NCBI RefSeq assembly: GCF_006345805.1
Contig: NC_043004.1
Coordinates: 52,514,001-52,578,000, forward strand
Length of the DNA: 64,000 nt
Reading direction: 5' to 3'
DNA from: Octopus sinensis
Taxonomy: Eukaryota
Shown here: in pieces, positions 6,092-61,362 of the stretch
Layout: the number at the start of each line of letters is the position of its first letter
How positions within the stretch are numbered: position 1 is the first letter of the stretch
Translations under genes and position numbers: made by a program
The notes under the pieces: generated by a model
Told to the model about the DNA's origin: nothing
Seen by the model: only the letters and a program-made list of their open reading frames with translations
Databases searched by the model: none

Positions 6092-6360
6092 CATCAGCAT
6101 AAGTATATGAGCATATGGAAAAGAATATATTTAGAGCGTTGCTCTCATGATTGGAATATGGTGGTTTCCATGAGTGGCGTTCTTGTGCCAAACGCTACAT
6201 TTCATGTGTCTCCACTAGACAGAAAAAATGAATAACCTTGCAATGGACAGGCAAAATGTCCAGCAGAAACATACCCCACGGAATTCGATAACGAGCCTTT
6301 TATGCCTATGGTTTACGAAGGAACTTAGATACTTGTTTTAATGTAAGCTTATATATATTT

Positions 6361-6587
6361 CTTTATTGCCCATAAGGAGCTAAACATAGAGGGGACAAAC
6401 AAGGACAGACAACGGGATTAAATCGATTACATCGACCACAGTGCGTAACTGGTACTTAATTTATCGACCCCGAAAGGATGAAAGGCAAAGTCGACCTCGG
6501 CGGAATTTGAACTCAGAACGTAACGACAGACGAAATACTGCTAAGCATTTCGCCCGTCGTGCTAACGTTTCTGCCAGCTCGCCGCCT
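6361..6587 (-). mobile_element. tRNA-derived SINE, family B
   Basis: Reverse complement of ggcggcgagctggcagaaacgttagcac...gagttcaaattccgccgaggtcgactttgcc. Confidence 0.88.
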
Positions 6588-9871: not shown

Positions 9872-10188
9872 TCTCTTTTACTCTTTGACTCTTTTACTTG
9901 TTTCAGTCATTTGACTGCGGCCATGCTGGAGCACCGCCTTTAGTCGAGCAAATCGACCCCGGGACTTATTCTTTGTAAGCCCAGTACTTATTCTATCGGT
10001 CGATTTTGCCGAACCGCTAAGTAACGGGTACGTAGACACACCAGCAATGCTGGGGGGGAGGGACCAACACAGACACACAAACACATACATATATATATAT
10101 ATATATAAGACAGGCTTCTTTCAGTTTCCGTCTACCAAATCCACTCACAAGGCATTGGTCGGCCCGGGGCTATAGCAGAACAGTGTGG
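9872..10188 (-). mobile_element. Body of tRNA-derived SINE (family A) interrupted by the gag-element array; B-box segment deleted
   Basis: Matches the intact copy at 17797-18236 (gccttgtgagtggatttggtagacggaaactgaaagaagc...gcggtgctccagcatggccgcagtcaaatgactgaaacaag). Its head lies at 15808-15831. Confidence 0.9.
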
Positions 10189-10206
10189 CTGGCTAGCAAG
10201 CTACTT

Positions 10207-12195
10207 TATTTCATATGATTTGCCACTAAGGCAGTACAAAGAGTAGCTGCGGCCTGGACAAAAACATTAATGAATGATGGTGATGGACGAAGATGGGGTT
10301 GGGAGAAGACGAAAGCGCCCGCCGACTTTCGCTTCTCTAAGACATTGTCCTTTTTTTTCAAAGGTTTTACAAAGATTTCAAATTTTACAAATTTTACCAG
10401 AGGCAATAAACCTCTTTTTCAATATAATACAATGTTCAGTAAGTCTATGTTACCCGGCCGACCAGCGCTCTTGCCTCAACGAGGCAATCATCGCTGGTCA
10501 GTTCGTGGTCTAGAGGTATTATTTGAAATGAGTCCATCGGGAAGGAACCCGTGATCCTGCCCAGATTACCCCTCCTTATGACCTCCGCAGCCAGCTGCGA
10601 AGGCCACTCGGGGTCCTCCGTGCAGGACCGAAGTCCCTCCCATTTTACTCATTTTACTCATCTCACCTTCCACTGTTCCACCTTTAAAAAAGAGAACCAC
10701 AAATTGTGTCCCACAAATTGTTCCTCAGGCGGCACACCCGCCTGAGAAGACTTCGGGGACGCCGTCTGCGTATCACAATCCGCCGGCGGCGTCCCGTTTC
10801 TCCTCTTCCTTTTCTTCTTTTTATCTTGGGCCGCGGGAGGTTGAGGTTGAGGTGTTGCACACACCGGGTTCTCTTCTTCTCCCGCAGCTTCCGGGTCTTT
10901 TGGTGGGTCGCCATTGCTCGCCACTTTTCTCTTTCTCGTTGAGGAAGTCGTCGCTTCCCCGCTCTGTTTCTCTCCCTCCATCGGGGGGGGGGGGGGCAGG
11001 GAGAGGCTACGACATCAAATGCTCCAGGATCCTACTTTGGTCCCTGGGGCAGTTTTTCCTAATATGGTCGGTGTCCAGGCACAGGTGACACTTGTGGAAG
11101 GGCGTCCCTCAAGCATTACCGGACACCTGTACCCGGCCATCCTCAAGAAGTCCGGCAAAACCAGACCTTTGGCTGATTGGGTCCATAGGGTCAAAGTAGC
11201 TATTGACCCCTCCCAATCAGCCGCAGCCTGTACTCTTACGTTTAGGAGCTTGGCGCTATTACCACCCAGACCCCGGCGGATAGAGTCCTCTATACACTCG
11301 GGTCCAACGCCGGGTGGTAAGCCGCAGATCCAAGCTCTCAACAATTTTTGTCCCTTGTAATTAGGGAGGAACAATATCTCCTTGCCCTCAATGGGCTTGC
11401 TTGCAAAGTCGCAAGCTGCTTTAGGGGAGTCAAACAGCAACCAAACCGTTGCGTATTTGACTCCCGGTGCGATGTATTTAACGGCTGGCATATAGTCTGC
11501 CAGCTCGTTAACAATAGTGGCCTTTGGAAAGACAGCTATGGTGTTGAGCAACTTTGAATAAGTCCTCAACACCACGGTCCTCTAGCTCTTTCAGATATCT
11601 TTTGGGAGGTGTCAACTCCCATATGGTGAACTCCTTTGCCATAACAAAAGTTCAAAAAACAGTTCAAAGTGATAAAATAAAATAGACAAAAAAAGGAGAA
11701 TAAAAACAGAACAGAAGGGAAGAAACAAAATTCGAAACAGCAGTTCAAAAAAGTCTTTTTAAAATAAAAGATAGCAGAAGAGAGTTCAAAATCGAGGCAA
11801 AGGAATTAATTTTTTTCTTTCTTTTTTCCCGGCCAAAAGGTATTCCAGGCCACTGGTGAAAATAATCCCTGGTACTCCGTTGATAAATCCGAAGACAAAG
11901 GCAATTACACACGTTAATTTTTTAGGTGGGGCTACGCCTTCTCAAAAACACAATTCTCACTACAAAGTGTGTCTTTATACTCGACCACAGGCAGGAAAAA
12001 AATGTCTGGAGCAAAGTGGAGTTTATTACTTGCTAAAAAATATTAAATGCTAAAAAACATTAAATGCAAGCAATAAACTTCACTAAGCTCCTAAAAATAC
12101 AAAACGCCTACCTGTAGTCGAGTCAAAAGTTCAACAATTCACGTTGAAACACGTGACAACTGGAGCATCAAAACAACACGTCTGAACACGTCAGA
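10207..12195 (-). mobile_element. ORF1-only non-LTR retroelement, copy 1 (~2.0 kb)
   Basis: Bounded by target repeats at 10189-10206 and 12196-12211. 5'UTR (~550 nt) and 3'UTR align with element 3. Ends in hairpin + AATAAA. Confidence 0.75.
10445..11642 (-). pseudogene. Frameshifted ORF1/gag-like gene of element 1 (close relative of the element 3 ORF)
   Basis: ATG at 11642 gives MAKEFTIWELTPPKRYL (element 3: MAKARNFTVWELAPPKKYL). Frameshift into track ORF 11015-11575. Knuckle CHLCLDTDHIRKNC is in another frame. C-terminus WPSQLAAEV...ELTSDDCLVEARALVGRVT* matches WPPRVAAER...DLSSQSCLQAARQFASGT*. Confidence 0.8.
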
Positions 12196-12211
12196 GGTTA
12201 GCGAGCTACTT

Positions 12212-13656
12212 TATTCTATCAGATTTGCCATAAAGGCAGTACACAGATGGGACACTACAACACATGTGGGGACAGATAACAATTAAAAAATAAAATATGA
12301 TATAATGGATGAACATGAAAATGCACATGAAGAACAAATTAAAATATGATAATATGAATGATATCTGAAAATGATATTATGAAGAGTGTGCTACTCACCC
12401 CACACTGAGTAACACAACTCCCTGTCTCTAGGTCCTGAGTCCTTTTTCTCTTTTCGTTCAATCCTGTCACTTGATGGTAACCTTCTCTCCGTCATGCATT
12501 CATAACCTTTTTCGCCGGGAGGGGGGGTCTTCTAAATTTTGTGGTGTCTGTTCTTTTTTTTTCTTTTTTTCTTGAGGGGAAATGGGGTGGGTGGGTTCGT
12601 GTCTGTATGGGGAGGGTGGGTCTGAGTGGTCTTGGGTGGGATGGGGTTGGACTGGGGTGCCACATCATACTCAGTGTCTTTTCTTTTTTTTCTCTTTCTT
12701 CTTGTGCGCTCTGCAACTTTCCATTCCTCCTTTTCATCGCTTCCTTCGTCTATTTTTTCTTTTTCCTCTTTTTTCTCTTCTGTCTCCGCAACCACATCCT
12801 CGGCCGTAGTCTTTCGTAGAGGGCAGTATGCTCTAATGTGGCCCTTTTGGCCACATTTAAAGCAACGTGGTACTCTGCCCTCTACCCACACCCTCAGAAC
12901 GATTTTCCCCAGCGTCACAGTTTCTGCCAAGTTCTCAAGTTGTTCCTCCTCTGTCTGAATGATTAATTCGAGCGTCCTTCCTTTGCACACTCCTTCTGTT
13001 TCTGTGGCTTGGAGGACAGCCACCTTCTCCTCGCTTCCAACAAGGACAGCTGCTGCTATCCAAGCCCCTTCTACGTCCGGCGGAATTGCTTCTACCCTCA
13101 CTTTGGAAGTTTTTCTTCCAAGGTATTTGGGCAGAAGCACTACCTCCTCCGTTTTCACCACCACACTTGCCAGCCTCATTGCCTCTTCAGCTGTCCTAAA
13201 TTGGACAATCATTGTTCCGTATCTTTTTCCTTTTGTGATGTATGTGATTTCTTTTGACCTCTCTCTTAGCGCTCTTTTTGTATCTGCTTCCACCGGTTCA
13301 GCCCTTTTTCCTTTTAAAGGGAACACCTTATAGGTGATAGTCTTTCTTTCTATCTTCTCCATGATTCCTTTGGGGGGCGACAGTCTTACGTCCCCTTCCA
13401 CCTTCTGTAGCATCTTGCCATAGTTTTTCAAACCAGCCAAGTCCAGCTCCTTTCGTCTCTTCTCCGTGATCTCTGCAAAACTCTTGTTCTTTTCAAGCAT
13501 ACTGTCCATTGCTATGACCGCCCTCACGAGCTCCACCTCTGAAGACAACTCAGACCCGGTAAGGTCTGAGTACATTGTCTCACCGCAGCAACAACACCGA
13601 CGTCCGACTCGCACACAAACGACAAACCAAATGCACTATGGGTAACCGGAAGCAAG
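12212..13656 (-). mobile_element. ORF1-only non-LTR retroelement, copy 2 (~1.45 kb, divergent family)
   Basis: Flanked by identical AAGTAGCTCGCTAACC copies (12196-12211 and 13659-13674). ~80-nt 5'UTR, single ORF, 3' hairpin + AATAAA. Confidence 0.75.
12532..13575 (-). CDS. 347-aa ORF1/gag-like protein (RRM-like + CCHC knuckle) of element 2
   Basis: First ATG at 13575 within the 360-aa track ORF. Contains VWVEGRVPRCFKCGQKGHIRAYCP. Aligns with the element 3 protein (LSPPKG~LAPPKK, FRTAEEA~FDSAEEA, LLPKYLG~FLPSYRG, IPP~LPP). Confidence 0.78.
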   Translation of the reverse strand: MYSDLTGSELSSEVELVRAVIAMDSMLEKNKSFAEITEKRRKELDLAGLKNYGKMLQKVEGDVRLSPPKGIMEKIERKTITYKVFPLKGKRAEPVEADTKRALRERSKEITYITKGKRYGTMIVQFRTAEEAMRLASVVVKTEEVVLLPKYLGRKTSKVRVEAIPPDVEGAWIAAAVLVGSEEKVAVLQATETEGVCKGRTLELIIQTEEEQLENLAETVTLGKIVLRVWVEGRVPRCFKCGQKGHIRAYCPLRKTTAEDVVAETEEKKEEKEKIDEGSDEKEEWKVAERTRRKRKKRKDTEYDVAPQSNPIPPKTTQTHPPHTDTNPPTPFPLKKKRKKKNRHHKI

Positions 13657-13674
13657 CTGGTTAGCGAGCTACTT

Positions 13675-15790
13675 TATTTCAATTATTTGCCACTTAGGGC
13701 ATCACACAGAGGTAGAAGTAGCTCCGGGCTGGACAGAGACATTAATGGATTATGGTAATGATGGATGAAAATGGTGATGGGAGAAGTCAGAAGCGCCCGT
13801 CGACCTCTGCTTCTCTAATACAATGTTCTTTTTACAATGTTTTTAAATTTTACAAAATTCAAAATTCAAAAATTTCAGAAAATAACAGTGTTCAATGAAT
13901 ACATTTAGTAAAATGTTCAAAAATGTTCAAAATGTTCAAATTACACTTTTTCAGACGAGGTGATAAACCTCCTCTTCAACATGTTTAAAAATGTTCAAAA
14001 TGTTCAAAAAGTGTTCAACAATTCTCCCCGTCAGGTCCCCGAAGCAAATTGTCTTGCCGCCTGCAGACAACTCTGCGACGACAAGTCGGGGCCTGCGAAG
14101 AGAAAGGTAAAGTACCTTCTTTCAAAGGTCTCTGCGACCCTTGATAAGATAGCCTCCGTTACCCTTTCCGCAGCTACCCGCGGAGGCCATAACGGATTTC
14201 TTGAGCCGACCGCGCCCTTGCGCTCTCGGTCGCTCAAGCCATTCAAGAAATCCTCCACCTCCTCTCCCTTGTGGTAGAGGAGGAGAAGCATCTCCTCTTC
14301 ACAGGAGTGGACCTCCAGTGGCTCACTTCCTACTGGCGGAGCCTTGTCCGCGGGTGGCACACATCCCACCCGCGGCTCCGTCGGCGACACAGAAACGTCA
14401 GACGTCCGACCTCTCCTTTTTCTCCTCCTTCTTTTGGGGGAGACTGCTAACCCAGGGGACTCCGTCACCAGACACGGGGGATTGCTATCCCCCTCCGCCC
14501 CCTGAGCGTTCTTTGGTGGGCAACCATTGTTGCTCGCCGGCCTCTTTCTTTTCGTGGAGGCAACCTCCTCCACGACTTCCACCGTCTCCCCCTCCAGTGA
14601 GGGGACGGCGGGCACCTTTTCCTTTTCATGTTCCGGGGCGGCACCACGGCCCCCGGGACACTTCTTCTTAATATGTCCAGGCTCCGAGCACCGGTGACAC
14701 TTGGGGGCGCGTCCCTCAAGCATCACCGGGTACCTGGACCCGGCCATCTTCAGGAAGTCCGGAAAAACCAGACTCTTGGCCGACTGGGTCCACAGAGTCA
14801 AAGTGGCCTTTGACCCTTCCCAGTTAGCCGCAGGCTGCATTTTAACGTTGAGGATCTTGGCGTCCCTGTCACCCAGCCCCCGGCGGATAGAGTCTTCTAT
14901 CCACTCGGGTTCAAAGCCGGGCGGCAGGCCACATACCCACAAACGTAACAGTTTTTCCCCCCTGTAACTGGGGAGAAACAGAATTTCATCGCCCTCAATG
15001 GGCTGGCTTGCACATTTGCAAGCTTCTTCGGCGGAGTCAAATAGCAACCAGACCGTTGCGTGCTTGACCCCCCGTTGTATATGTTTAACGGCTGGCATAT
15101 AATCTTCCAGCTCGTTCTCAATGGTATCTCTCGGAAAGACCATTATGGTGTCGAGTACCTTTGAAAATGTTCTCAGCACCACGGTTCTTTCCTCAAGATC
15201 ATGTAAATATTTTTTGGGAGGTGCTAACTCCCACACAGTAAAATTCCTTGCCTTCGCCATAACGTAAAATACAATAGTTCAATAATAACTAAATTTAGCC
15301 ACAGAAAGGAGAATAAAAATGTAACAGAAGGGAAGAAAAAATAAAAATGGCAGTTCAAAAAAGTTTTTAACAAATAAATGATAGAAGAGAAAGAGAGTTC
15401 AAATTAGGCAAAGGAATTCAGTTTTCTTTTTTTTCTCACTTCTTCGGCCAGAATGTAATCCGTGCCAAATGCATTGGTAAGACCCTTGGTAAACAATCCT
15501 TGGTAATCCCGTGGACACACAATGACGATTTCACAATAATCTCTTCAGTCGGACCAAGCCGCTTCAAAAATACAATTTCTTTCGCTCGACACAGGCAGAA
15601 AAATTACATTCGGAGAAAAGTGGAGCCTTATTACTTCCTAAAAAATATTAAATGTTAAAAAACATTCATGCAAGCAATAAAGCTTCACTAAACCCACAAA
15701 AACACAAATTTCCTACCTTTAGTCGAGACGACAGTTCAATATTTCACGTTGAAACAACGAGACATCGGAGCAGCAAAAAAACACGTCCGT
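13675..15790 (-). mobile_element. ORF1-only non-LTR retroelement, copy 3 (~2.1 kb)
   Basis: Bounded by target repeats at 13657-13674 and 15791-15807. ~530-nt 5'UTR, intact ORF, ~355-nt 3'UTR. Confidence 0.75.
14031..15260 (-). CDS. Intact 409-aa ORF1/gag-like protein (RRM-like region + CCHC zinc knuckle) of non-LTR element 3; L1/Tx1-type
   Basis: ATG-initiated long ORF with CHRCSEPGHIKKKC (Cx2Cx4Hx4C) preceded by VMLEGR, then a basic/proline-rich linker. Homologous by eye to the two neighbouring ORFs. Confidence 0.8.
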   Translation of the reverse strand: MAKARNFTVWELAPPKKYLHDLEERTVVLRTFSKVLDTIMVFPRDTIENELEDYMPAVKHIQRGVKHATVWLLFDSAEEACKCASQPIEGDEILFLPSYRGEKLLRLWVCGLPPGFEPEWIEDSIRRGLGDRDAKILNVKMQPAANWEGSKATLTLWTQSAKSLVFPDFLKMAGSRYPVMLEGRAPKCHRCSEPGHIKKKCPGGRGAAPEHEKEKVPAVPSLEGETVEVVEEVASTKRKRPASNNGCPPKNAQGAEGDSNPPCLVTESPGLAVSPKRRRRKRRGRTSDVSVSPTEPRVGCVPPADKAPPVGSEPLEVHSCEEEMLLLLYHKGEEVEDFLNGLSDRERKGAVGSRNPLWPPRVAAERVTEAILSRVAETFERRYFTFLFAGPDLSSQSCLQAARQFASGT

Positions 15791-15831
15791 CTGGTAAGAA
15801 GCTACTTACCACACAACCACTCCTGCGCCTA
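15791..15831 (-). mobile_element. 5' head (A box) of the split family A SINE plus target-site copy
   Basis: Minus strand reads aggcgcaggagtggttgtgtggtaagtagcttcttacca, nearly identical to the SINE heads at 17797 and 58030. Confidence 0.88.
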
Positions 15832-17796: not shown

Positions 17797-17985
17797 GGGC
17801 GCAGGAGTGGCTATGTGGTAAGTAGCTTGCTTACCAACCACATGGTTCCGGGTTCAGTCCCACTGCGTGATACTTTGGGCAAGTTTCTTCTACTAGAGCA
17901 TCGGGCCGACCAAAGCCTTGTGAGTGGATTTGGTAGACGAAACTGAAAGAAGCATGTCGTGTATATGTATATATATATATATATG

Positions 17986-27092: not shown

Positions 27093-27680
27093 GGTGGCGA
27101 GCTGGCAGAAACGTTAGCACGCCGGGCGAAATGCTTAGTGGTATTTCGTCTGCGGTTACGTTCTGAGTTCAAATTCCGCCGAGGTCGACTTTGCCTTTCA
27201 TCCTTCCGGAGTCGATTAAATAAGTACCAATTACGCACTGGGGTCGATATAATCGACTTAATCCGTATATCTGTCCTTGTTTGTCCTCTCTGTGTTTAGC
27301 CCCTTGTGGGTAGTAAAGAAATAGGTATTTCGTCTGCGGTTACGTTCTGAGTTCAAATTCAGCCGAGGTCGACTTTGCCTTTCATCTTTCCGGGGTCGAT
27401 TAAATAAGTACCAGTTACACACTGGGGTCGATATTTCGACTTAATCCGTTTGTCTGTCCTTGTTTGTCCTCTCTGTGTTTAGCCCCTTGTGGGTAGTAAA
27501 GAAATAAGTATTTCGTCTGCCGTTACGTTCTGAGTTCAAATTCCGCCGAGGACGACTTTGCCTTTCATCATTTTGAGGTCAATAAATTAAGTACTAGTTG
27601 TGAACTGGATTTGATCTAATCGACTGCTCCCCCCTCCACTAAAATTTCGGGCCTTGTGCCTAGAATAGGAAAGAATTCAT
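27093..27680 (+). mobile_element. Family B SINE with triplicated body
   Basis: One head followed by three successive gtatttcgtctgc...gagttcaaattc...gactttgcctttcatc units. Confidence 0.88.
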
Positions 27681-30850: not shown

Positions 30851-31225
30851 TCTTTTACTCTTTTATTTGCTCTGTTATTGACTGCGGCCGTGCTGGATCA
30901 CCGCCTTTAGTCGAACGAATCGATTCCAGTACCTATTCTGTATAAGCCTAAAGCTTATTGTGTCGTACTATTTTGCCGAAACGCTAGACTACGGGGACGT
31001 AAACACACCAGCATTGGTTGTCAAGCGATGGTGAGGGACAAACACAGACATACCAACATACACACTCACATCATACACACACACGCGCGCACACACACAC
31101 ATATATATATACGACAGGCTTCTTTCAGTTTCCGTCTACGAAGGTACCCAAGTTGTCACGCAGTGGGACTCAAGCCGGAACCTTATGGTTGGTAAGCAAG
31201 CTACTTACCACGCAGTCACGCTTGT
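30851..31225 (-). mobile_element. Family A SINE (degenerate)
   Basis: Similarity to the 17797 copy. Confidence 0.8.
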
Positions 31226-35654: not shown

Positions 35655-36063
35655 GGCGGCGAGCTGGCAGACACGTTAGCGCGCCGGGCGAAATGCTTCG
35701 CGGTATTTCGTCTGCGTTACGTTGTGAGTTCAAATTCCGCCGAGGTCAACTTTGCCTTTCATCCTTTCGGGGTCGATAAATTAAGTACCAGTTATGCACT
35801 GGAGTCGATGTAATCGACTTAATACCTATGTCTGTCCTTGTTTGTCCCCTCTGTGTTTAACCCCTTGTGGGTAATAAAGAAATAGGTATTTCGTCTGCCG
35901 TAACGTTCTGAGTTCAAATTCCGCCGAGGTCAACTTTGCCTTTCATCCTTTCGGGGTCGACAAATAAAGTACCAATTTCGCACTGGAGGCGATATAATCG
36001 ACTCAATCCCTTCGTCTGTCCTTGTTTGTCCCCTCTATGTTTAGCCCCTTGTGGGCAGTAAAG

Positions 36064-36068
<5 letters not shown>
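35655..36068 (+). mobile_element. Family B SINE with duplicated body
   Basis: Head plus two body units. Confidence 0.88.
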
Positions 36069-39160: not shown

Positions 39161-39577
39161 ACTCTTTTACTCTTTTACTCATTTCAGTCACTTGACTTCG
39201 GCCATGCTGGAGCACCGCCTTTAGTCGAGCAAATAGACCCCGGGACTTATTCTTTTTAAGCCCAGTACTTATTCTATCGGTCTCTTTTGCCGAACCACTA
39301 AGTGACGGGGACGTAAACACACCAGCATCGGTTGTCAAGCAATGCTAGGGGACAAACACAGACACACAAACATATACAAACACACACACATATATATATA
39401 TATATACATATATACGACAAGCTTCTTTCAGTTTCCGTCTACCAAATCCACTCACAAGGCATTGGTCGGCTCGGGGCTATAGCAGAAGACACTAGCCCAA
39501 GATACCACGCAGTGGGACTGAACCCGGAACCATGTGGTTGGTTAGCAAGCTACTTAACACACAGCCACTCCTTGCCT
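39161..39577 (-). mobile_element. Family A SINE
   Basis: Near full-length similarity. Its empty target site reads aagtagcttgctaaccaacc. Confidence 0.88.
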
Positions 39578-58029: not shown

Positions 58030-58201
58030 AGGCGTAGGAGTGGCTGTGTGGTAAGTAGCTTGTTTACCAACCACATGGTTCCGGGTTCAGTCCCACTGCG
58101 TGGCATCTTGGGCAGGTGTCTTCTGCTATAGCCCCGGGCCGACCGATGCCTTATGAGTGGATTTGGTAGAGGGAAACTGAAAGAAGCCTGTCCTATATAT
58201 G

Positions 58202-58700: not shown

Positions 58701-58890
58701 ATGAGTGGTTTGAAGGAAAACATGTGGAATGCGTAATCAAAAGATATAGATAAACACACATTGAGCATTTAAGACCAAAATAAAGATTGACTCATTAAAA
58801 GGCTAAAAAATAGTGAAATCGAATAATGAAAATGGAATGATAAACGAGCTGCTAAATATTAAAGGACGTCAAATATAGAAAGGGTCTTCT

Positions 58891-60420
58891 GTGAGAATGT
58901 GAGAATGTGTGGAAAATGTGAGAATGTGGAGAATGTGAGAATGTGTGGAGAATGTGAGAATATGGAGAATGTGAGAATGTGTGGAAAATGTGAGAATGTG
59001 GAGAATGTGAGAATGTGTGGAGAATGTGAGAATGTGGAGAATGTGAGAATGTGTGGAAAATGTGAGAATGTGGAGAATGTGAGAATGTGTGGAGAATGTG
59101 AGAATGTGGAGAATGTGAGAATGTGTGGAAAATGTGAGAATGTGGAGAATGTGAGAATGTGTGGAGAATGTGAGAATGTGGAGAATGTGAGAATGTGTGG
59201 AAAATGTGAGAATGTGGAGAATGTGAGAATGTGTGGAGAATGTGAGAATGTGGAGAATGTGAGAATGTGTGGAGTATGTGAGAATGTGGAGAATGTGAAG
59301 ATGTGTGGAGAATGTGAGAATGTGGAGAATGTGAGAATGTGGAGAATGTGAGAATGTGTGGAGAATGTGAGAATGTGGAGAATGTAAGAATGTGGAGAAT
59401 GTGAGAATGTGTGGAGAATGTGAGAATGTGGAGAATGTGAGAATGTGTGGAGAATGTGAGAATGTGAGAATGTGGAGATGTGAGAATGTGTGGAGAATGT
59501 GGAATGTGGAGAATGTGAGAATGTGTGGAGAATGTGAGAATGTGGAGAATGTGAGAATGTGTGGAGAATGTGAGAATGTGGAGAATGTGAAAATGTGTGG
59601 AGAATGTGAGAATGTGGAGAATGTGAGAATGTGTGGAGAATGTGAGAATGTGAAGAATGTGAGAATGTGTAGAGAATGAGAGAATGTGGAGAATGTGAGA
59701 ATGTGTGGAGAAGGTGAGAATGTGGAGAATGTGAGAATGTGTGGATAATGTGAGAATGTGTGGAGAATGTGAGAATGTGTGGAGAATGCGAGAATGTGTG
59801 GACAATGTGAGAATGTGGAGAATGCGAGAATGTGGAGAATGTGAGAATGTGTGGAGAATGTGAGAATGTGGAGAATGTGAGAATGTGTGGAGAATATGAG
59901 AATGTGGAGAATGTGAGAATGTGTGGAGAATGTGAGAATGTGGAGAATGTAAGAATATGTGGAGAATGTGAGAATGTGGAGAATGTGAGAATGTGTGGAG
60001 AATGTGAGAATGTGGAGAATGTGAGAATGTGTGGAGAATGTGAGAATGTGGAGAATGTGAGAATGTGTGGAGAATGTGAGAATGTGGAGAATGTGAGAAT
60101 GTGTGGAGAATGTGAGAATGTGGAGAATGTAAGAATGTGTGGAGAATGTGTGAATGTGGAGAATGTGAGAATGTGTGGAGAATGTGAGAATGTGGAGAAT
60201 GTGAGAATGTGTGGAGAATGTGAGAATGTGGAGAATGTGAGAATGTGTGGAGAATGTGAGAATGTGGAGAATGTGAGAATGTGTGGAGAATGTGAGAATG
60301 TGGAGAATGTGAGAATGTGTGGAGAATGTGAGAATGTGGAGAATGTGAGAATGTGTGGAGAACGTGAGAATGTGGAGAATGTGAGAATGTGGAGAATGTG
60401 TGAATGTGTGGAGAATGTGT
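58891..60420 (+). repeat. ~1.5-kb minisatellite; 36-bp higher-order unit built from GAGAATGT subunits
   Basis: Unit GTGGAGAATGTGAGAATGTGGAGAATGTGAGAATGT repeated with few variants. Confidence 0.95.
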
Positions 60421-60529
60421 GGAAGAAAACTAGTGAAAACGATAGACAGTAGCAGCTGCAATAACAACAAGCAACAACAACAGCAACAACAACAGCTACC
60501 ACAACAACAGAAATAATAATAATTATCAA

Positions 60530-61362
60530 GAAGTACAAGAGAAGACATAAAAACCTGAGCATGGGCTAGGATGATTATCGCAAAGCATACGATATGATAC
60601 AGTAATCCTGGATTATAAGAAGAATGAAAAGTTATGGAGTAGCTGAGAATATGAGAAGCCCTATACGAAACAGCATGAAATGTTGGAGAACGGAATTGAC
60701 AGCAGGAGAGTAATTACTAGGAGAGGTGAAAATCAAGAGAGGAATATTCCAGGGAAACGGTGTGTCCCCACTGATATTCGTGCTTGGAACGATCCCCTTC
60801 AGTGAAACACTACAGAGAACAAAGTTGTGGTATGATATTGGAAGAGTTAAGGGAAAACTAAACCACTTGCTATTCATAGACGACCTGAAGATATTCGCAG
60901 AAAGTGAGGCAGAACTGGACACCCTAATCTAGTCTCTGCGGATTTTCCCCAATGATTTTAAGATGTATTTTGGACTTACAAAATGTGCTACTATGGGGAT
61001 GAAAAGAGGAAGGCTTGTCAGGAGAGAGGGCATATCGCTACCAAGTGTTGAAATGATGAAGGTCATTCAAACCCCAATTCAGCTATATATACCTGGGAAT
61101 ACTTGAGGCAGATAGAATCAAATACCAAGACATGAACGCCAGAAAAATAATTTCAGTAATAAACTCGCGCGCAACCGCAGTACTTGGTTATGGCGCTGGA
61201 ATCCTAAATGGATAGAAGAGGAGCTAAAGGAGATAGACATGAAGTCAAGAAAGCTCCTAACGATGCATGGTGCTCATCATACACATGCAGACATTAAATT
61301 CCTACACATGAAGACAGCAAATAGAGGAAGGGTACGTTTAAGTGTGGAGGACTGCGTGCGTA
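60530..61362 (+). mobile_element. R4/Dong-type RT fragment
   Basis: DYRKAYDMI, VKIKRGIFQGNGVSPLIF, LNHLLFIDDLKIFAESE, LSVEDCV. Confidence 0.82.

What the first reader, a model, noticed from the sequence alone, without database searches (positions are those of the whole stretch)
10207..13701. Shared 3'-terminal hairpin + AATAAA module in otherwise divergent elements
The last ~35 nt of each unit (minus strand) are TGTACTGCC-TTAGT-GGCA-AATCATATGAAATAAA (hairpin at 10221-10233), TGTACTGCC-TTTAT-GGCA-AATCTGATAGAATAAA (12226-12238) and TGTGATGCC-CTAAGT-GGCA-AATAATTGAAATAAA (13688-13701). The TGCC/GGCA stem is invariant while the loop varies. Element 2 shares little else at the DNA level with elements 1 and 3. 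Established: stringent-type LINE RTs recognise 3' stem-loops. Inference: this is the cis signal for the partner RT and a handle for finding it.
Basis: partly seen in the sequence, partly recalled or inferred. Interest (0 to 1): 0.7.

Follow-up and report, generated by a model that had tools for sequence, protein, structure and literature searches.

The report
Shared LINE/SINE 3' tail hairpin in octopus
The small hairpin plus AATAAA that ends the three units is real: it is the common 3' tail of an octopus L1/Tx1-like retrotransposon family, also carried by reverse-transcriptase-encoding copies and by an abundant SINE, and the three units are gag-only (ORF1-only) family members inserted one after another into the same site of another SINE.

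Summary
On the minus strand, three retroelements lie head to tail: E3 (15790-13673), E2 (13647-12210) and E1 (12195-10205). Each encodes only an ORF1-like protein with two RRMs and a CCHC knuckle. All three sit inside one tRNA-derived SINE, cut at GGTAA|GTAGCT.

The 14 nt after each AATAAA is a copy of the SINE target site, not part of the module. E2 is flanked by a perfect 14-bp duplication.

The tail is a 4-bp stem, a 5-nt loop and a 12-16 nt A-rich end. It recurs on full-length LINEs of O. sinensis, O. vulgaris and Argonauta hians. Their ORF2 has endonuclease, RT and zf-RVT domains and matches human L1 ORF2p at E 2e-71. The tail also recurs on other ORF1-only elements and on a second SINE in this window.

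Across 23 distinct tails, 93% of stem positions pair and three of four pairs show compensatory changes. Family-wide the loop is the conserved part (YTWRT, mostly CTTGT).

This is most likely a stringent-type template-recognition tail. That function is inferred, not tested. The exact RT partner with the TGCC/GGCA stem and the SINE target was not found. I rate it a new member of a known kind, of moderate interest.

The parts
15791..15829 (-). 5' part (head) of the target tRNA-derived SINE ('SINE1'), GGCGCAGGAGTGGTTGTGTGGTAAGTAGCTTCTTACCAG. Its last 17 nt (15791-15807) are the left copy of the target site.
   Evidence: aligns with four intact SINE1 heads in the window up to ...CTTACCA, then diverges into E3.
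13673..15790 (-). E3, an ORF1-only retroelement. Its intact ORF (15260-14031, 409 aa) has tandem RRMs and a CCHC knuckle. It has no ORF2. It ends ...TGCCCTAAGTGGCAAATAATTGAAATAAA.
13673..13709 (-). E3 3' tail module: hairpin at 13688-13701 (6-nt loop), followed by a 15-nt A-rich end containing AATAAA.
   Evidence: covariance-model hit 13680-13709, E 0.0066
13659..13672 (-). GTAGCTCGCTAACC, a copy of the SINE1 target site between E3 and E2. It is the left target-site duplication of E2.
   Evidence: identical to 12196-12209
13648..13658 (-). AGCTTGCTTCC, an 11-nt 5' extension of E2. It is a different variant of the same SINE1 site and matches the flank in L001. It was probably carried over from E2's donor locus.
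   Evidence: the origin is inferred
12210..13647 (-). E2, an ORF1-only retroelement of a divergent lineage. Its ORF (13575-12532, 347 aa) is intact. It is the youngest insert.
12210..12247 (-). E2 3' tail module: hairpin at 12226-12238, followed by a 16-nt A-rich end.
   Evidence: covariance-model hit 12218-12247, E 3.7e-4
12196..12209 (-). GTAGCTCGCTAACC, the right target-site duplication of E2.
10205..12195 (-). E1, a decayed relative of E3 (74% nt identity). Its ORF1 is broken and the CCHC knuckle is lost.
10205..10242 (-). E1 3' tail module: hairpin at 10221-10233, followed by a 16-nt A-rich end.
   Evidence: covariance-model hit 10213-10242, E 3e-6
9873..10204 (-). The rest of SINE1, starting with the right copy of the target site (10189-10204, GTAGCTTGCTAGCCAG). 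It has an internal deletion and ends in (GTAAAAGA)-like repeats.
17813..17839 (+). Intact SINE1 head, that is, an unoccupied target site. Others lie at 31187-31213 (-), 39536-39562 (-) and 58046-58072 (+).
6360..6389 (-). The same tail module at the 3' end of a second tRNA-SINE ('SINE2', about 6590-6350), which has a 15-bp duplication TATATAAGCTTACAT. Stem GCTC/GGGC.
35851..35880 (+). SINE2 tail (stem ACCC/GGGT). Further SINE2 tails lie at 27290-27319, 27473-27502 and 36035-36064 (+), and a second subfamily tail (GGGC/GCCT) at 27640-27669.
13711..13725 (-). GGAGCTACTTCTACC in the E3 3' UTR. Nine of its nucleotides are complementary to the target-site start AAGTAGCTC. E1 has GCAGCTACTC at the homologous place (10241-10250). 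Its role is unknown.
   Evidence: 10 of 2000 shuffles reach 9 nt

Best explanation
The module is the common 3' tail of an octopod LINE family of the L1 superfamily (Tx1-like). It consists of a 4-bp stem closed by a 5-nt YTWRT loop and followed by a 12-16 nt A-rich end without a poly(A) tail.

The most likely mechanism is as follows. The family's ORF2 protein (endonuclease plus RT) recognises this tail on the RNA and starts target-primed reverse transcription there. Any RNA that ends in the tail is therefore copied. That includes full-length LINEs, ORF1-only derivatives such as E1-E3, and a tRNA-derived SINE.

E1, E2 and E3 are three such non-autonomous ORF1-only elements from two divergent lineages. 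They were inserted one after another, in the same orientation, into the same position of a SINE head (GGTAA|GTAGCTTGCTTACC). Each insertion duplicated about 14-17 bp of target, which is why each unit is followed by GTAGCTYGCTARCC. E2 came last and landed in the duplicated site between E3 and E1.

AATAAA probably also serves as the poly(A) signal of the pol II-transcribed members. Their transcripts would then run a few nucleotides into the target-derived flank.

Shown here: the anatomy, the duplications, homology of the tails, covariation of the stem, and presence of the tail on RT-encoding copies and on a SINE.

Inferred: recognition by the RT, poly(A)-signal use, and the sharing of one partner by the two lineages.
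For: **Anatomy**
- The split SINE and the duplicated site are shown.
- E2 is flanked by identical 14-mers.
- An independent O. sinensis copy of the E3 lineage (L001) is preceded by the same SINE head, ending at the same position.

**Proteins**
- ORF1 has two RRMs and a CCHC knuckle.
- E2 and E3 ORF1 are homologous.
- A profile search finds 876 representative proteins at E <= 0.001; every member whose source names an organism (11 looked up) is from Octopus or Argonauta.

**RT-encoding relatives with the tail**
- L002...AGCC-CTTGT-GGCC-AATAAA.
- L004 and L005: GCCC-CTTGT-GGGT-AATAAAGAAATCA, with an intact 1132-aa ORF2 that has Exo_endo_phos, RVT_1 and zf-RVT domains. It aligns to human L1 ORF2p residues 6-891 at E 2e-71.
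- Argonauta L009: TGCC-CTTGT-GGCG-AATAAAGAAATG, with a 16-bp duplication.

**Other non-autonomous carriers**
- ORF1-only elements L003 (17-bp duplication) and L008 (11-bp duplication, stem AGGC/GCCT).
- SINE2 copies.

**Structure**
- On 16 tails, 92.2% of cells pair against 73.8% in shuffles, 3 of 4 pairs change on both sides, and the covariation score is 0.487 against 0.162 (0/500).
- On 23 distinct tails found by a covariance model, 93.4% of cells pair and the score is 0.510 (0/500); slid controls reach at most 46%.

**AATAAA**
- It is present in 12 of 12 LINE and ORF1-only tails but in only 2 of 10 SINE2-type tails. My count is; Fisher p is about 1.4e-4, but the copies are not independent.

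**Precedent**
- Stringent L1-clade tails with compensated hairpins shared with SINEs are known (PMC3472496).
- Tx1 elements target other transposons, with tandem inserts sandwiching a 16-bp duplication (PMC4494074).
- L1-Tx1 families averaging about 5.4 kb per insertion are annotated in O. vulgaris (PMC13282606).
Against: - No functional test was possible.
- The stem has only 4 bp, and the local folds are no more stable than shuffles.
- Many of the 23 tails are related copies, so the number of independent compensatory events is small, roughly 3-5.
- No RT-encoding copy with exactly the E-type tail (TGCC/GGCA followed by AATC...AATAAA) or inserted in the SINE1 site was found. The nearest are L009 and L002.
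- More distant ORF2 relatives are not informative: L006 (39% identity) lacks a clear stem, and the element end in L007 is undefined.
- Target specificity is lineage-specific. L003, L008 and L009 sit elsewhere, and one E2-like copy (L095) shows no SINE1 head upstream.
Confidence: 0.75

Rival explanations
1. The module is mainly a 3'-end processing signal (AATAAA plus an upstream element) for pol II transcripts of these elements, not a reverse-transcriptase recognition signal.
For: AATAAA is kept in all 12 LINE and ORF1-only tails examined but in only 2 of 10 SINE-type tails (my count). In the E lineage it sits at the very end of the element.
Against: - The stem-loop is kept, with compensating changes, in the pol III-type SINE2 tails that have lost AATAAA.
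- The elements carry no poly(A) tail.
- The position of AATAAA relative to the stem shifts between lineages, while the stem and loop stay.
- The two roles are not exclusive.
Confidence: 0.12
2. The head-to-tail array arose in a single event. The RT would have jumped from the 5' end of one template RNA to the 3' end of the next (E1, then E2, then E3), each RNA carrying a few nucleotides of read-through flank. On this view the 14-mers are transduced flanks, not target-site duplications.
For: - The two internal 14-mers are identical to each other but differ from the outer SINE copies.
- E2 carries a donor-derived 11-nt 5' extension.
- Head-to-tail arrays are frequent in the family (L004, L005 and SINE2 units).
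Against: The three elements differ greatly in decay. E1's ORF is broken, while the ORFs of E2 and E3 are intact. A perfect duplication around the youngest-looking element and diverged outer copies is what sequential insertion predicts. Tandem inserts sandwiching a duplication are attributed to sequential insertion in Tx1-mobilised SINEs (PMC4494074).
Confidence: 0.1
3. The shared tail reflects local sequence homogenisation (gene conversion within the array), or derivation from the SINE target, or plain chance. On this view it is not a family-wide functional element.
Against: The same module ends elements at unrelated loci in three other genomes and in other places of this window. Intact SINE1 copies do not contain it. 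The shuffles exclude chance.
Confidence: 0.02

Closest known systems
Stringent-type LINE/SINE common 3' tails with a conserved stem-loop (eel UnaL2/UnaSINE1; monocot LINE1-1_ZM with ZmSINE2/3, PMC3472496)
   Same: A short 3'-terminal sequence is shared by an autonomous LINE and by non-autonomous elements that are otherwise unrelated. The hairpin has compensatory stem changes and conserved loop nucleotides. There is no dependence on a poly(A) tail.
   Different: - The host is an octopod and the LINE is L1/Tx1-like.
- The stem has only 4 bp.
- The non-autonomous users include protein-coding ORF1-only elements as well as a SINE.
- No assay exists.
Tx1 group of the L1 clade: target-specific LINEs such as Tx1L, Keno, Kibi, Koshi and Tx1-Mar with SINEU (PMC4494074)
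   Same: - APE-type ORF2 of L1 type.
- ORF1 with RNA-binding domains and a CCHC knuckle.
- Insertion in one orientation into a defined site of another repeat.
- Target-site duplications of about 16 bp.
- Tandem inserts sandwiching a duplication.
- One relative here sits in an (ATT)n microsatellite (L002).
   Different: The target here is the head of a tRNA-derived SINE. The copies seen at that target are ORF1-only and non-autonomous. Clade placement by RT phylogeny was not done. Several relatives (L008, L009) are not in recognisable repeat targets.
HAL1 ('half-L1'), ORF1-only L1 derivatives of mammals (from my own knowledge: Bao and Jurka 2010)
   Same: Non-autonomous elements that keep an intact ORF1 and lack ORF2, presumably mobilised in trans by the ORF2 protein of a full-length relative.
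   Different: Here at least three deeply divergent ORF1-only lineages exist: E3/E1, E2/L003 and L008, with ORF1 identity of about 25-50%. They share only a structured tail rather than a poly(A), and some are target-specific.

Membership tests
Stringent-type LINE/SINE shared 3' tail | The same 3'-terminal sequence is present on an RT-encoding LINE and on otherwise unrelated non-autonomous elements. | tested here: met
   Tails of L002, L004, L005 and L009 (ORF2-bearing), against E1-E3, L003 and L008 (ORF1-only) and SINE2 copies.
Stringent-type LINE/SINE shared 3' tail | A stem-loop supported by compensatory substitutions. | tested here: met
   92-93% of cells pair, 3 of 4 pairs change on both sides, 0 of 500 shuffles reach the covariation score, and slid controls reach at most 46%.
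Stringent-type LINE/SINE shared 3' tail | The tail is required for retrotransposition or RT binding. | not testable with these tools
   This needs a retrotransposition or RNP-binding assay.
L1 superfamily, Tx1 group | ORF2 has an N-terminal APE endonuclease, an RT and a C-terminal zinc-binding domain, and is of L1 type. | tested here: met
   One search finds Exo_endo_phos, RVT_1 and zf-RVT. One search matches human L1 ORF2p at E 2e-71 over endonuclease and RT; R2 proteins match only over the RT, at E 1e-24 or weaker.
L1 superfamily, Tx1 group | RT phylogeny places the element inside the Tx1 clade. | not tested
   No reference Tx1 RT set was available. Indirect support: the closest named relatives are fish ORF1-ORF2 proteins with RBD_ZCCHC3 x2, CCHC, APE, RT and zf-RVT domains, and published annotations list L1-Tx1 in octopus (PMC8967140, PMC13282606).
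L1 superfamily, Tx1 group | ORF1 has RNA-binding domain(s) followed by a CCHC knuckle. | tested here: met
   zf-CCHC scores just below the Pfam cut-off (19.2 and 20.3 against 20.8 bits). The AlphaFold model has two RRM-like domains with block pLDDT about 58-90 over residues 21-200. Foldseek matches tandem-RRM proteins at E 1e-5.
L1 superfamily, Tx1 group | Sequence-specific insertion in one orientation, with target-site duplication. | tested here: met
   For the E lineages, E1, E2, E3, the donor-derived 5' extension of E2 and L001 all lie at the same SINE1 position. This is not general in the family: L003, L008 and L009 are elsewhere.
HAL1-like ORF1-only non-autonomous LINE derivatives | An intact ORF1, no ORF2, bounded by target-site duplications, and sharing its terminus with a full-length LINE. 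| tested here: met
   E2 (1.45 kb, perfect 14-bp duplication), E3, L003 (17-bp duplication) and L008 (11-bp duplication). The window holds no RT ORF.
Helitron 3' end (hairpin 10-12 nt before a CTRR terminus) | No target-site duplication, insertion between A and T, 5' TC, and association with Rep/helicase. | tested here: not met
   Duplications of 14-17 bp are present. The elements encode ORF1, and their relatives encode APE and RT. The CTAA/CTAG after AATAAA belongs to the SINE target.
LTR or solo-LTR with AATAAA in R | Long terminal direct repeats bounding each unit, a TG...CA boundary, and 4-6 bp duplications. | tested here: not met
   Apart from the terminal module and the 14-mer, the direct-repeat matches between units are the collinear E1/E3 homology and short low-complexity matches, not repeats bounding a unit.

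The most novel reading that the evidence does not exclude
In the E lineages, the choice of the SINE-head target may be carried at least partly by the non-autonomous RNA itself rather than only by the partner's endonuclease. AATAAA sits at the very end of the element, so transcripts should run into the duplicated target sequence. That read-through could anneal to the nicked target. In E3 and E1, an internal 3'-UTR segment (GAGCTACTT, complementary to the target start AAGTAGCTC) could also pair with the target or with the read-through flank. This would amount to RNA-guided homing of a gag-only retroelement into a SINE.
Probability: 0.12. Interest if true: 0.75.

Novelty: new member of a known kind. 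Interest (0 to 1): 0.42.

Why it matters
SINEs are a large fraction of Octopus genomes (11.6% of the O. vulgaris genome in PMC13282606). The papers I could read discuss RTE and Dong LINEs (PMC9115989) but name no partner LINE for the SINEs.

The shared, covarying tail links one abundant tRNA-SINE family and a set of gag-only elements to L1/Tx1-like LINEs. This gives a concrete sequence handle for censuses and for retrotransposition assays.

It also adds an animal example of a structured, stringent-type tail within the L1 superfamily. Finally, it shows a target-specific lineage that homes into a SINE head, which explains head-to-tail nests that automated annotation would fragment.

Tried and rejected
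- **Helitron end** (hairpin plus CTRR) and **LTR** readings were rejected on duplications, coding content and the SINE origin of the 14-mer.
- **Rfam and ARAGORN** on the region found no ribozyme, tRNA or known RNA family. There were only two sub-threshold miRNA-model hits.
- **Thermodynamic test** of the local hairpins was not significant.
- **Homologue search with the E3 ORF** returned a single protein. The window's own ORF is not on record, and O. bimaculoides homologues have no contigs on record.
- **Metagenome scan** for GGCAAAT-N6-12-AATAAAGTAGCT gave 85 hits, and none of the 25 contexts I read had the flanking stem plus SINE1-site context; I take them for chance matches.
- **L006 and L007** (distant ORF2 relatives of unknown taxa) gave no usable tail.
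- **L095** (an E2-like copy) lacks the 3' end and shows no SINE1 head.
- **Names attached to ORF2 homologues** were uninformative for clade assignment.
- **Search for the RT-bearing partner** with the E-type tail in the SINE1 site found nothing in about 216 kb of cephalopod sequence.


Full report
**Observation**

The hairpins lie at 10221-10233, 12226-12238 and 13688-13701, and AATAAA ends at 10205, 12210 and 13673.

A pattern for the module has no chance expectation in shuffles. The 20-mer AATAAAGTAGCTYGCTARCC occurs three times without mismatch, against 0.02 expected.

blastn confirms that E2 shares only its last 38 nt with E1. E1 and E3 are 74% identical over about 1.2 kb. Folded alone, the last 60 nt are no more stable than shuffles (z -0.15 to -1.07). 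The local evidence for a structure is therefore weak, and the case rests on relatives.

**What surrounds it**

The window is AT-rich eukaryotic DNA. All protein relatives that carry an organism name come from Octopus and Argonauta.

The three units are retroelements that each encode a single protein.
- E3 runs 15790-13673, with an intact 409-aa ORF.
- E2 runs 13647-12210, with an intact 347-aa ORF.
- E1 runs 12195-10205 and is a decayed relative of E3.

The E2 and E3 proteins are homologous although only 26% identical (E 1e-21). They have a CCHC knuckle just under the Pfam threshold. An AlphaFold model shows two RRM-like domains, with block pLDDT of about 58-90 over residues 21-200. These match tandem-RRM proteins in the PDB. 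This is the architecture of a LINE ORF1 protein of the RRM-plus-knuckle type. No reverse transcriptase ORF exists in the window.

**The array sits inside a SINE**

Upstream of E3 lies the head of a tRNA-derived SINE: GGCGCAGGAGTGGTTGTGTGGTAAGTAGCTTCTTACCAG, at 15829-15791. Downstream of E1 the same SINE continues from GTAGCTTGCTAGCCAGCC... to its (GTAAAAGA)-like end at 9873.

I aligned both flanks with four intact copies in the window. Both flanks contain AAGTAGCTTGCTTACCA, which is a target-site duplication of about 17 bp. The 14 nt GTAGCTCGCTAACC that follows E3 and E2 is a further copy of this site.

The two copies flanking E2 are identical. E2 is therefore the youngest insert and landed in the duplicated site between E3 and E1. 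E2 also begins with AGCTTGCTTCC, a different variant of the same site. I read this as sequence carried from a donor locus that sat in the same SINE position (inference).

An independent copy of the E3 lineage in O. sinensis (L001, protein 60% identical) is preceded by the same SINE head, ending at ...GGTAAGTAGCTTGCTTCC. All five observable events of these two lineages thus map to one position. That is target specificity, not coincidence.

**Relatives with a reverse transcriptase**

A profile of the ORF1 proteins finds 876 representative proteins at E <= 0.001. I fetched the loci of several.

| Locus | Source | Element | Flanks | Tail |
|---|---|---|---|---|
| L002 | O. sinensis | ORF1 plus broken ORF2 | (ATT)n on both sides | ...TGTGTGTC AGCC CTTGT GGCC AATAAAAAGAATTA |
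| L004, L005 | O. sinensis, O. vulgaris | head-to-tail arrays of about 5.3-kb full-length elements | next array unit | ...GCCC CTTGT GGGT AATAAAGAAATCA |
| L009 | Argonauta hians | full-length | 16-bp duplication | ...TGCC CTTGT GGCG AATAAAGAAATG |

- L002.
- L004 and L005. One ORF2 of 1132 aa is intact. It has Exo_endo_phos, RVT_1 and zf-RVT domains. It aligns with human L1 ORF2p over endonuclease and RT at E 2e-71, whereas R2 proteins match only the RT.
- L009.

The closest named relatives outside cephalopods are fish ORF1-ORF2 proteins. These have two ZCCHC3-type RNA-binding domains, a knuckle, APE, RT and zf-RVT. Published annotations list L1-Tx1 families in octopus, including 13 recently active ones in O. 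vulgaris averaging about 5.4 kb per insertion (PMC8967140, PMC13282606). I therefore place the family in the L1 superfamily and call it Tx1-like. No RT phylogeny was done.

**Other users of the tail**
- L003 (O. sinensis) is a 1.6-kb ORF1-only element inside a second tRNA-SINE, with a 17-bp duplication.
- L008 (O. vulgaris) is another ORF1-only element with an 11-bp duplication. Its tail is AGGC CTTGT GCCT ATAATAAAGAGAAA.
- That second SINE ('SINE2') itself ends in the module. Window 6590-6350 (-) ends ...GCTC CTTAT GGGC AATAAAGAAATA and has a 15-bp duplication. Further copies lie at 27290, 27473, 35851 and 36035.

An autonomous LINE, protein-coding non-autonomous elements and a SINE sharing one tail is the classical signature of stringent 3'-end recognition.

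**Is the hairpin real?**

On 16 tails, the 4-bp helix pairs in 92.2% of cells (shuffles 73.8 +/- 3.8, 0/500). Three of four pairs show changes on both sides, and the covariation score is 0.487 against 0.162 (0/500). Slid controls reach at most 45%.

A covariance model built from these found 24 matches in 216 kb, including new ones in Argonauta and a second SINE2 subfamily. On the 23 distinct rows the figures are 93.4% paired and 0.510 (0/500).

Pair types:

| Pair | Types seen |
|---|---|
| 1 | GU, AU, GC, UA, UG |
| 2 | CG 11, GC 9 |
| 3 | CG 19, GC 2, UG 1 |
| 4 | CG always |

Many tails are related, so independent events are few, but the direction of the evidence is clear. Family-wide the loop is the conserved part (YTWRT, mostly CTTGT). 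The E loops TTAGT and TTTAT fit this pattern, and E3 has one extra base.

The A-rich end after the stem is 12-16 nt long. AATAAA directly follows the stem in most lineages and has moved to the very end in the E lineage. It is present in 12 of 12 LINE and ORF1-only tails but in only 2 of 10 SINE-type tails (my count). This suggests an added poly(A)-signal role in pol II-transcribed members.

**Mechanism proposed**

The ORF2 protein of a family member binds the stem-loop tail and starts target-primed reverse transcription at the A-rich end. The staggered cuts give duplications of 11-17 bp.

E2 and E3/E1 share nothing at the DNA level but the tail and the target site. This is most simply explained if both are mobilised by the same partner, one whose endonuclease prefers GGTAA|GTAGCT. 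That partner was not found. All of this is inferred from anatomy and from precedent. PMC3472496 covers stringent L1-clade tails with compensated hairpins. PMC4494074 covers Tx1 target specificity and tandem inserts sandwiching a 16-bp duplication.

**Rivals**
- A pure 3'-processing role is contradicted by retention of the stem in SINE tails that lack AATAAA.
- A single-event template-switch origin of the array is possible. It is less likely given the unequal decay of the three elements and E2's perfect duplication.
- Local homogenisation and chance are excluded by the distant copies.

**Novelty**

The kind is known: stringent LINE/SINE tails, Tx1-like target specificity and ORF1-only derivatives. 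New here, as far as the searchable literature shows, are four points:
- an octopod L1/Tx1-like family with a structured tail;
- its pairing with an abundant octopus SINE;
- several deep ORF1-only lineages;
- a lineage homing into a SINE head.

**Limits**

No octopus-wide DNA search was possible. Sampling was restricted to loci reachable through annotated proteins.

Noticed in passing
window 27290-27502 and 35851-35900 (+): Three SINE2 tails are each followed directly by internal SINE2 sequence, (G)GTATTTCGTCTGC, which is about position 47 of the SINE. This gives head-less units of about 183 nt in tandem. Either SINE2 inserts preferentially at that internal site with homology-assisted 5' joining, or the units were amplified as a satellite.
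   Followed up: partly
L004 and L005 (whole loci): Full-length 5.3-kb L1/Tx1-like elements form head-to-tail arrays of at least three copies in both O. sinensis and O. vulgaris. Each tail abuts the next 5' UTR (...GGGTAATAAAGAAATCA|TAGACACTGA...). The target at the array ends was not seen.
   Followed up: partly
L004 ~8982, L005 ~9333, L002 7803, L009 ~9587, L003 ~8900, L008 ~9152; window ~12400 (-): A 5' splice-site-like GGTAAGT (variants GGTGAGT, GGTAGGT) sits just after or near the ORF1 stop, both in full-length and in ORF1-only relatives. The gene call for P0011 spans 6.9 kb of L002 and the protein matches L002 only up to 7803, the position of this motif, as if the model were spliced there. 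It may relate to ORF2 expression or to the origin of ORF1-only forms.
   Followed up: no
window 13711-13725 and 10241-10250 (-): The E3 3' UTR contains GAGCTACTT, complementary to the target-site start AAGTAGCTC (9 nt; 10 of 2000 shuffles do as well). With the flank included, the fold scores z = -3.0. E1 keeps AGCTACT at the homologous place, and E2 has nothing comparable.
   Followed up: partly
P0003 and P0051 (proteins): An O. bimaculoides protein model fuses the N-terminal half of an E2-like ORF1 to a C2H2 zinc-finger array. Another protein carries an ORF1-like stretch inside a protein with Helitron_like_N and PIF1 domains. These may be chimeric gene models, captures or exaptations.
   Followed up: no
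window 10150-10204 (-): The right-hand part of the target SINE1 lacks about 45 nt present in the intact copies, between GTTC and CTTC. This deletion removes the B-box-like GGTTCAGTCCC region.
   Followed up: no
window 58850-60560: A long tandem repeat reads as open frames of up to 567 aa on both strands and has an extreme GC skew (0.66 in 58-60 kb). It appears unrelated to the finding.
   Followed up: no
window 13840-14020 and 10360-10430 (-); L008 9380-9500: The 3' UTRs of E3, E1 and L008 contain short tandem A/T-rich motifs (TTTGAACATTT, GTAAAATTT and TTGTAAAGT repeats) upstream of the conserved tail.
   Followed up: no
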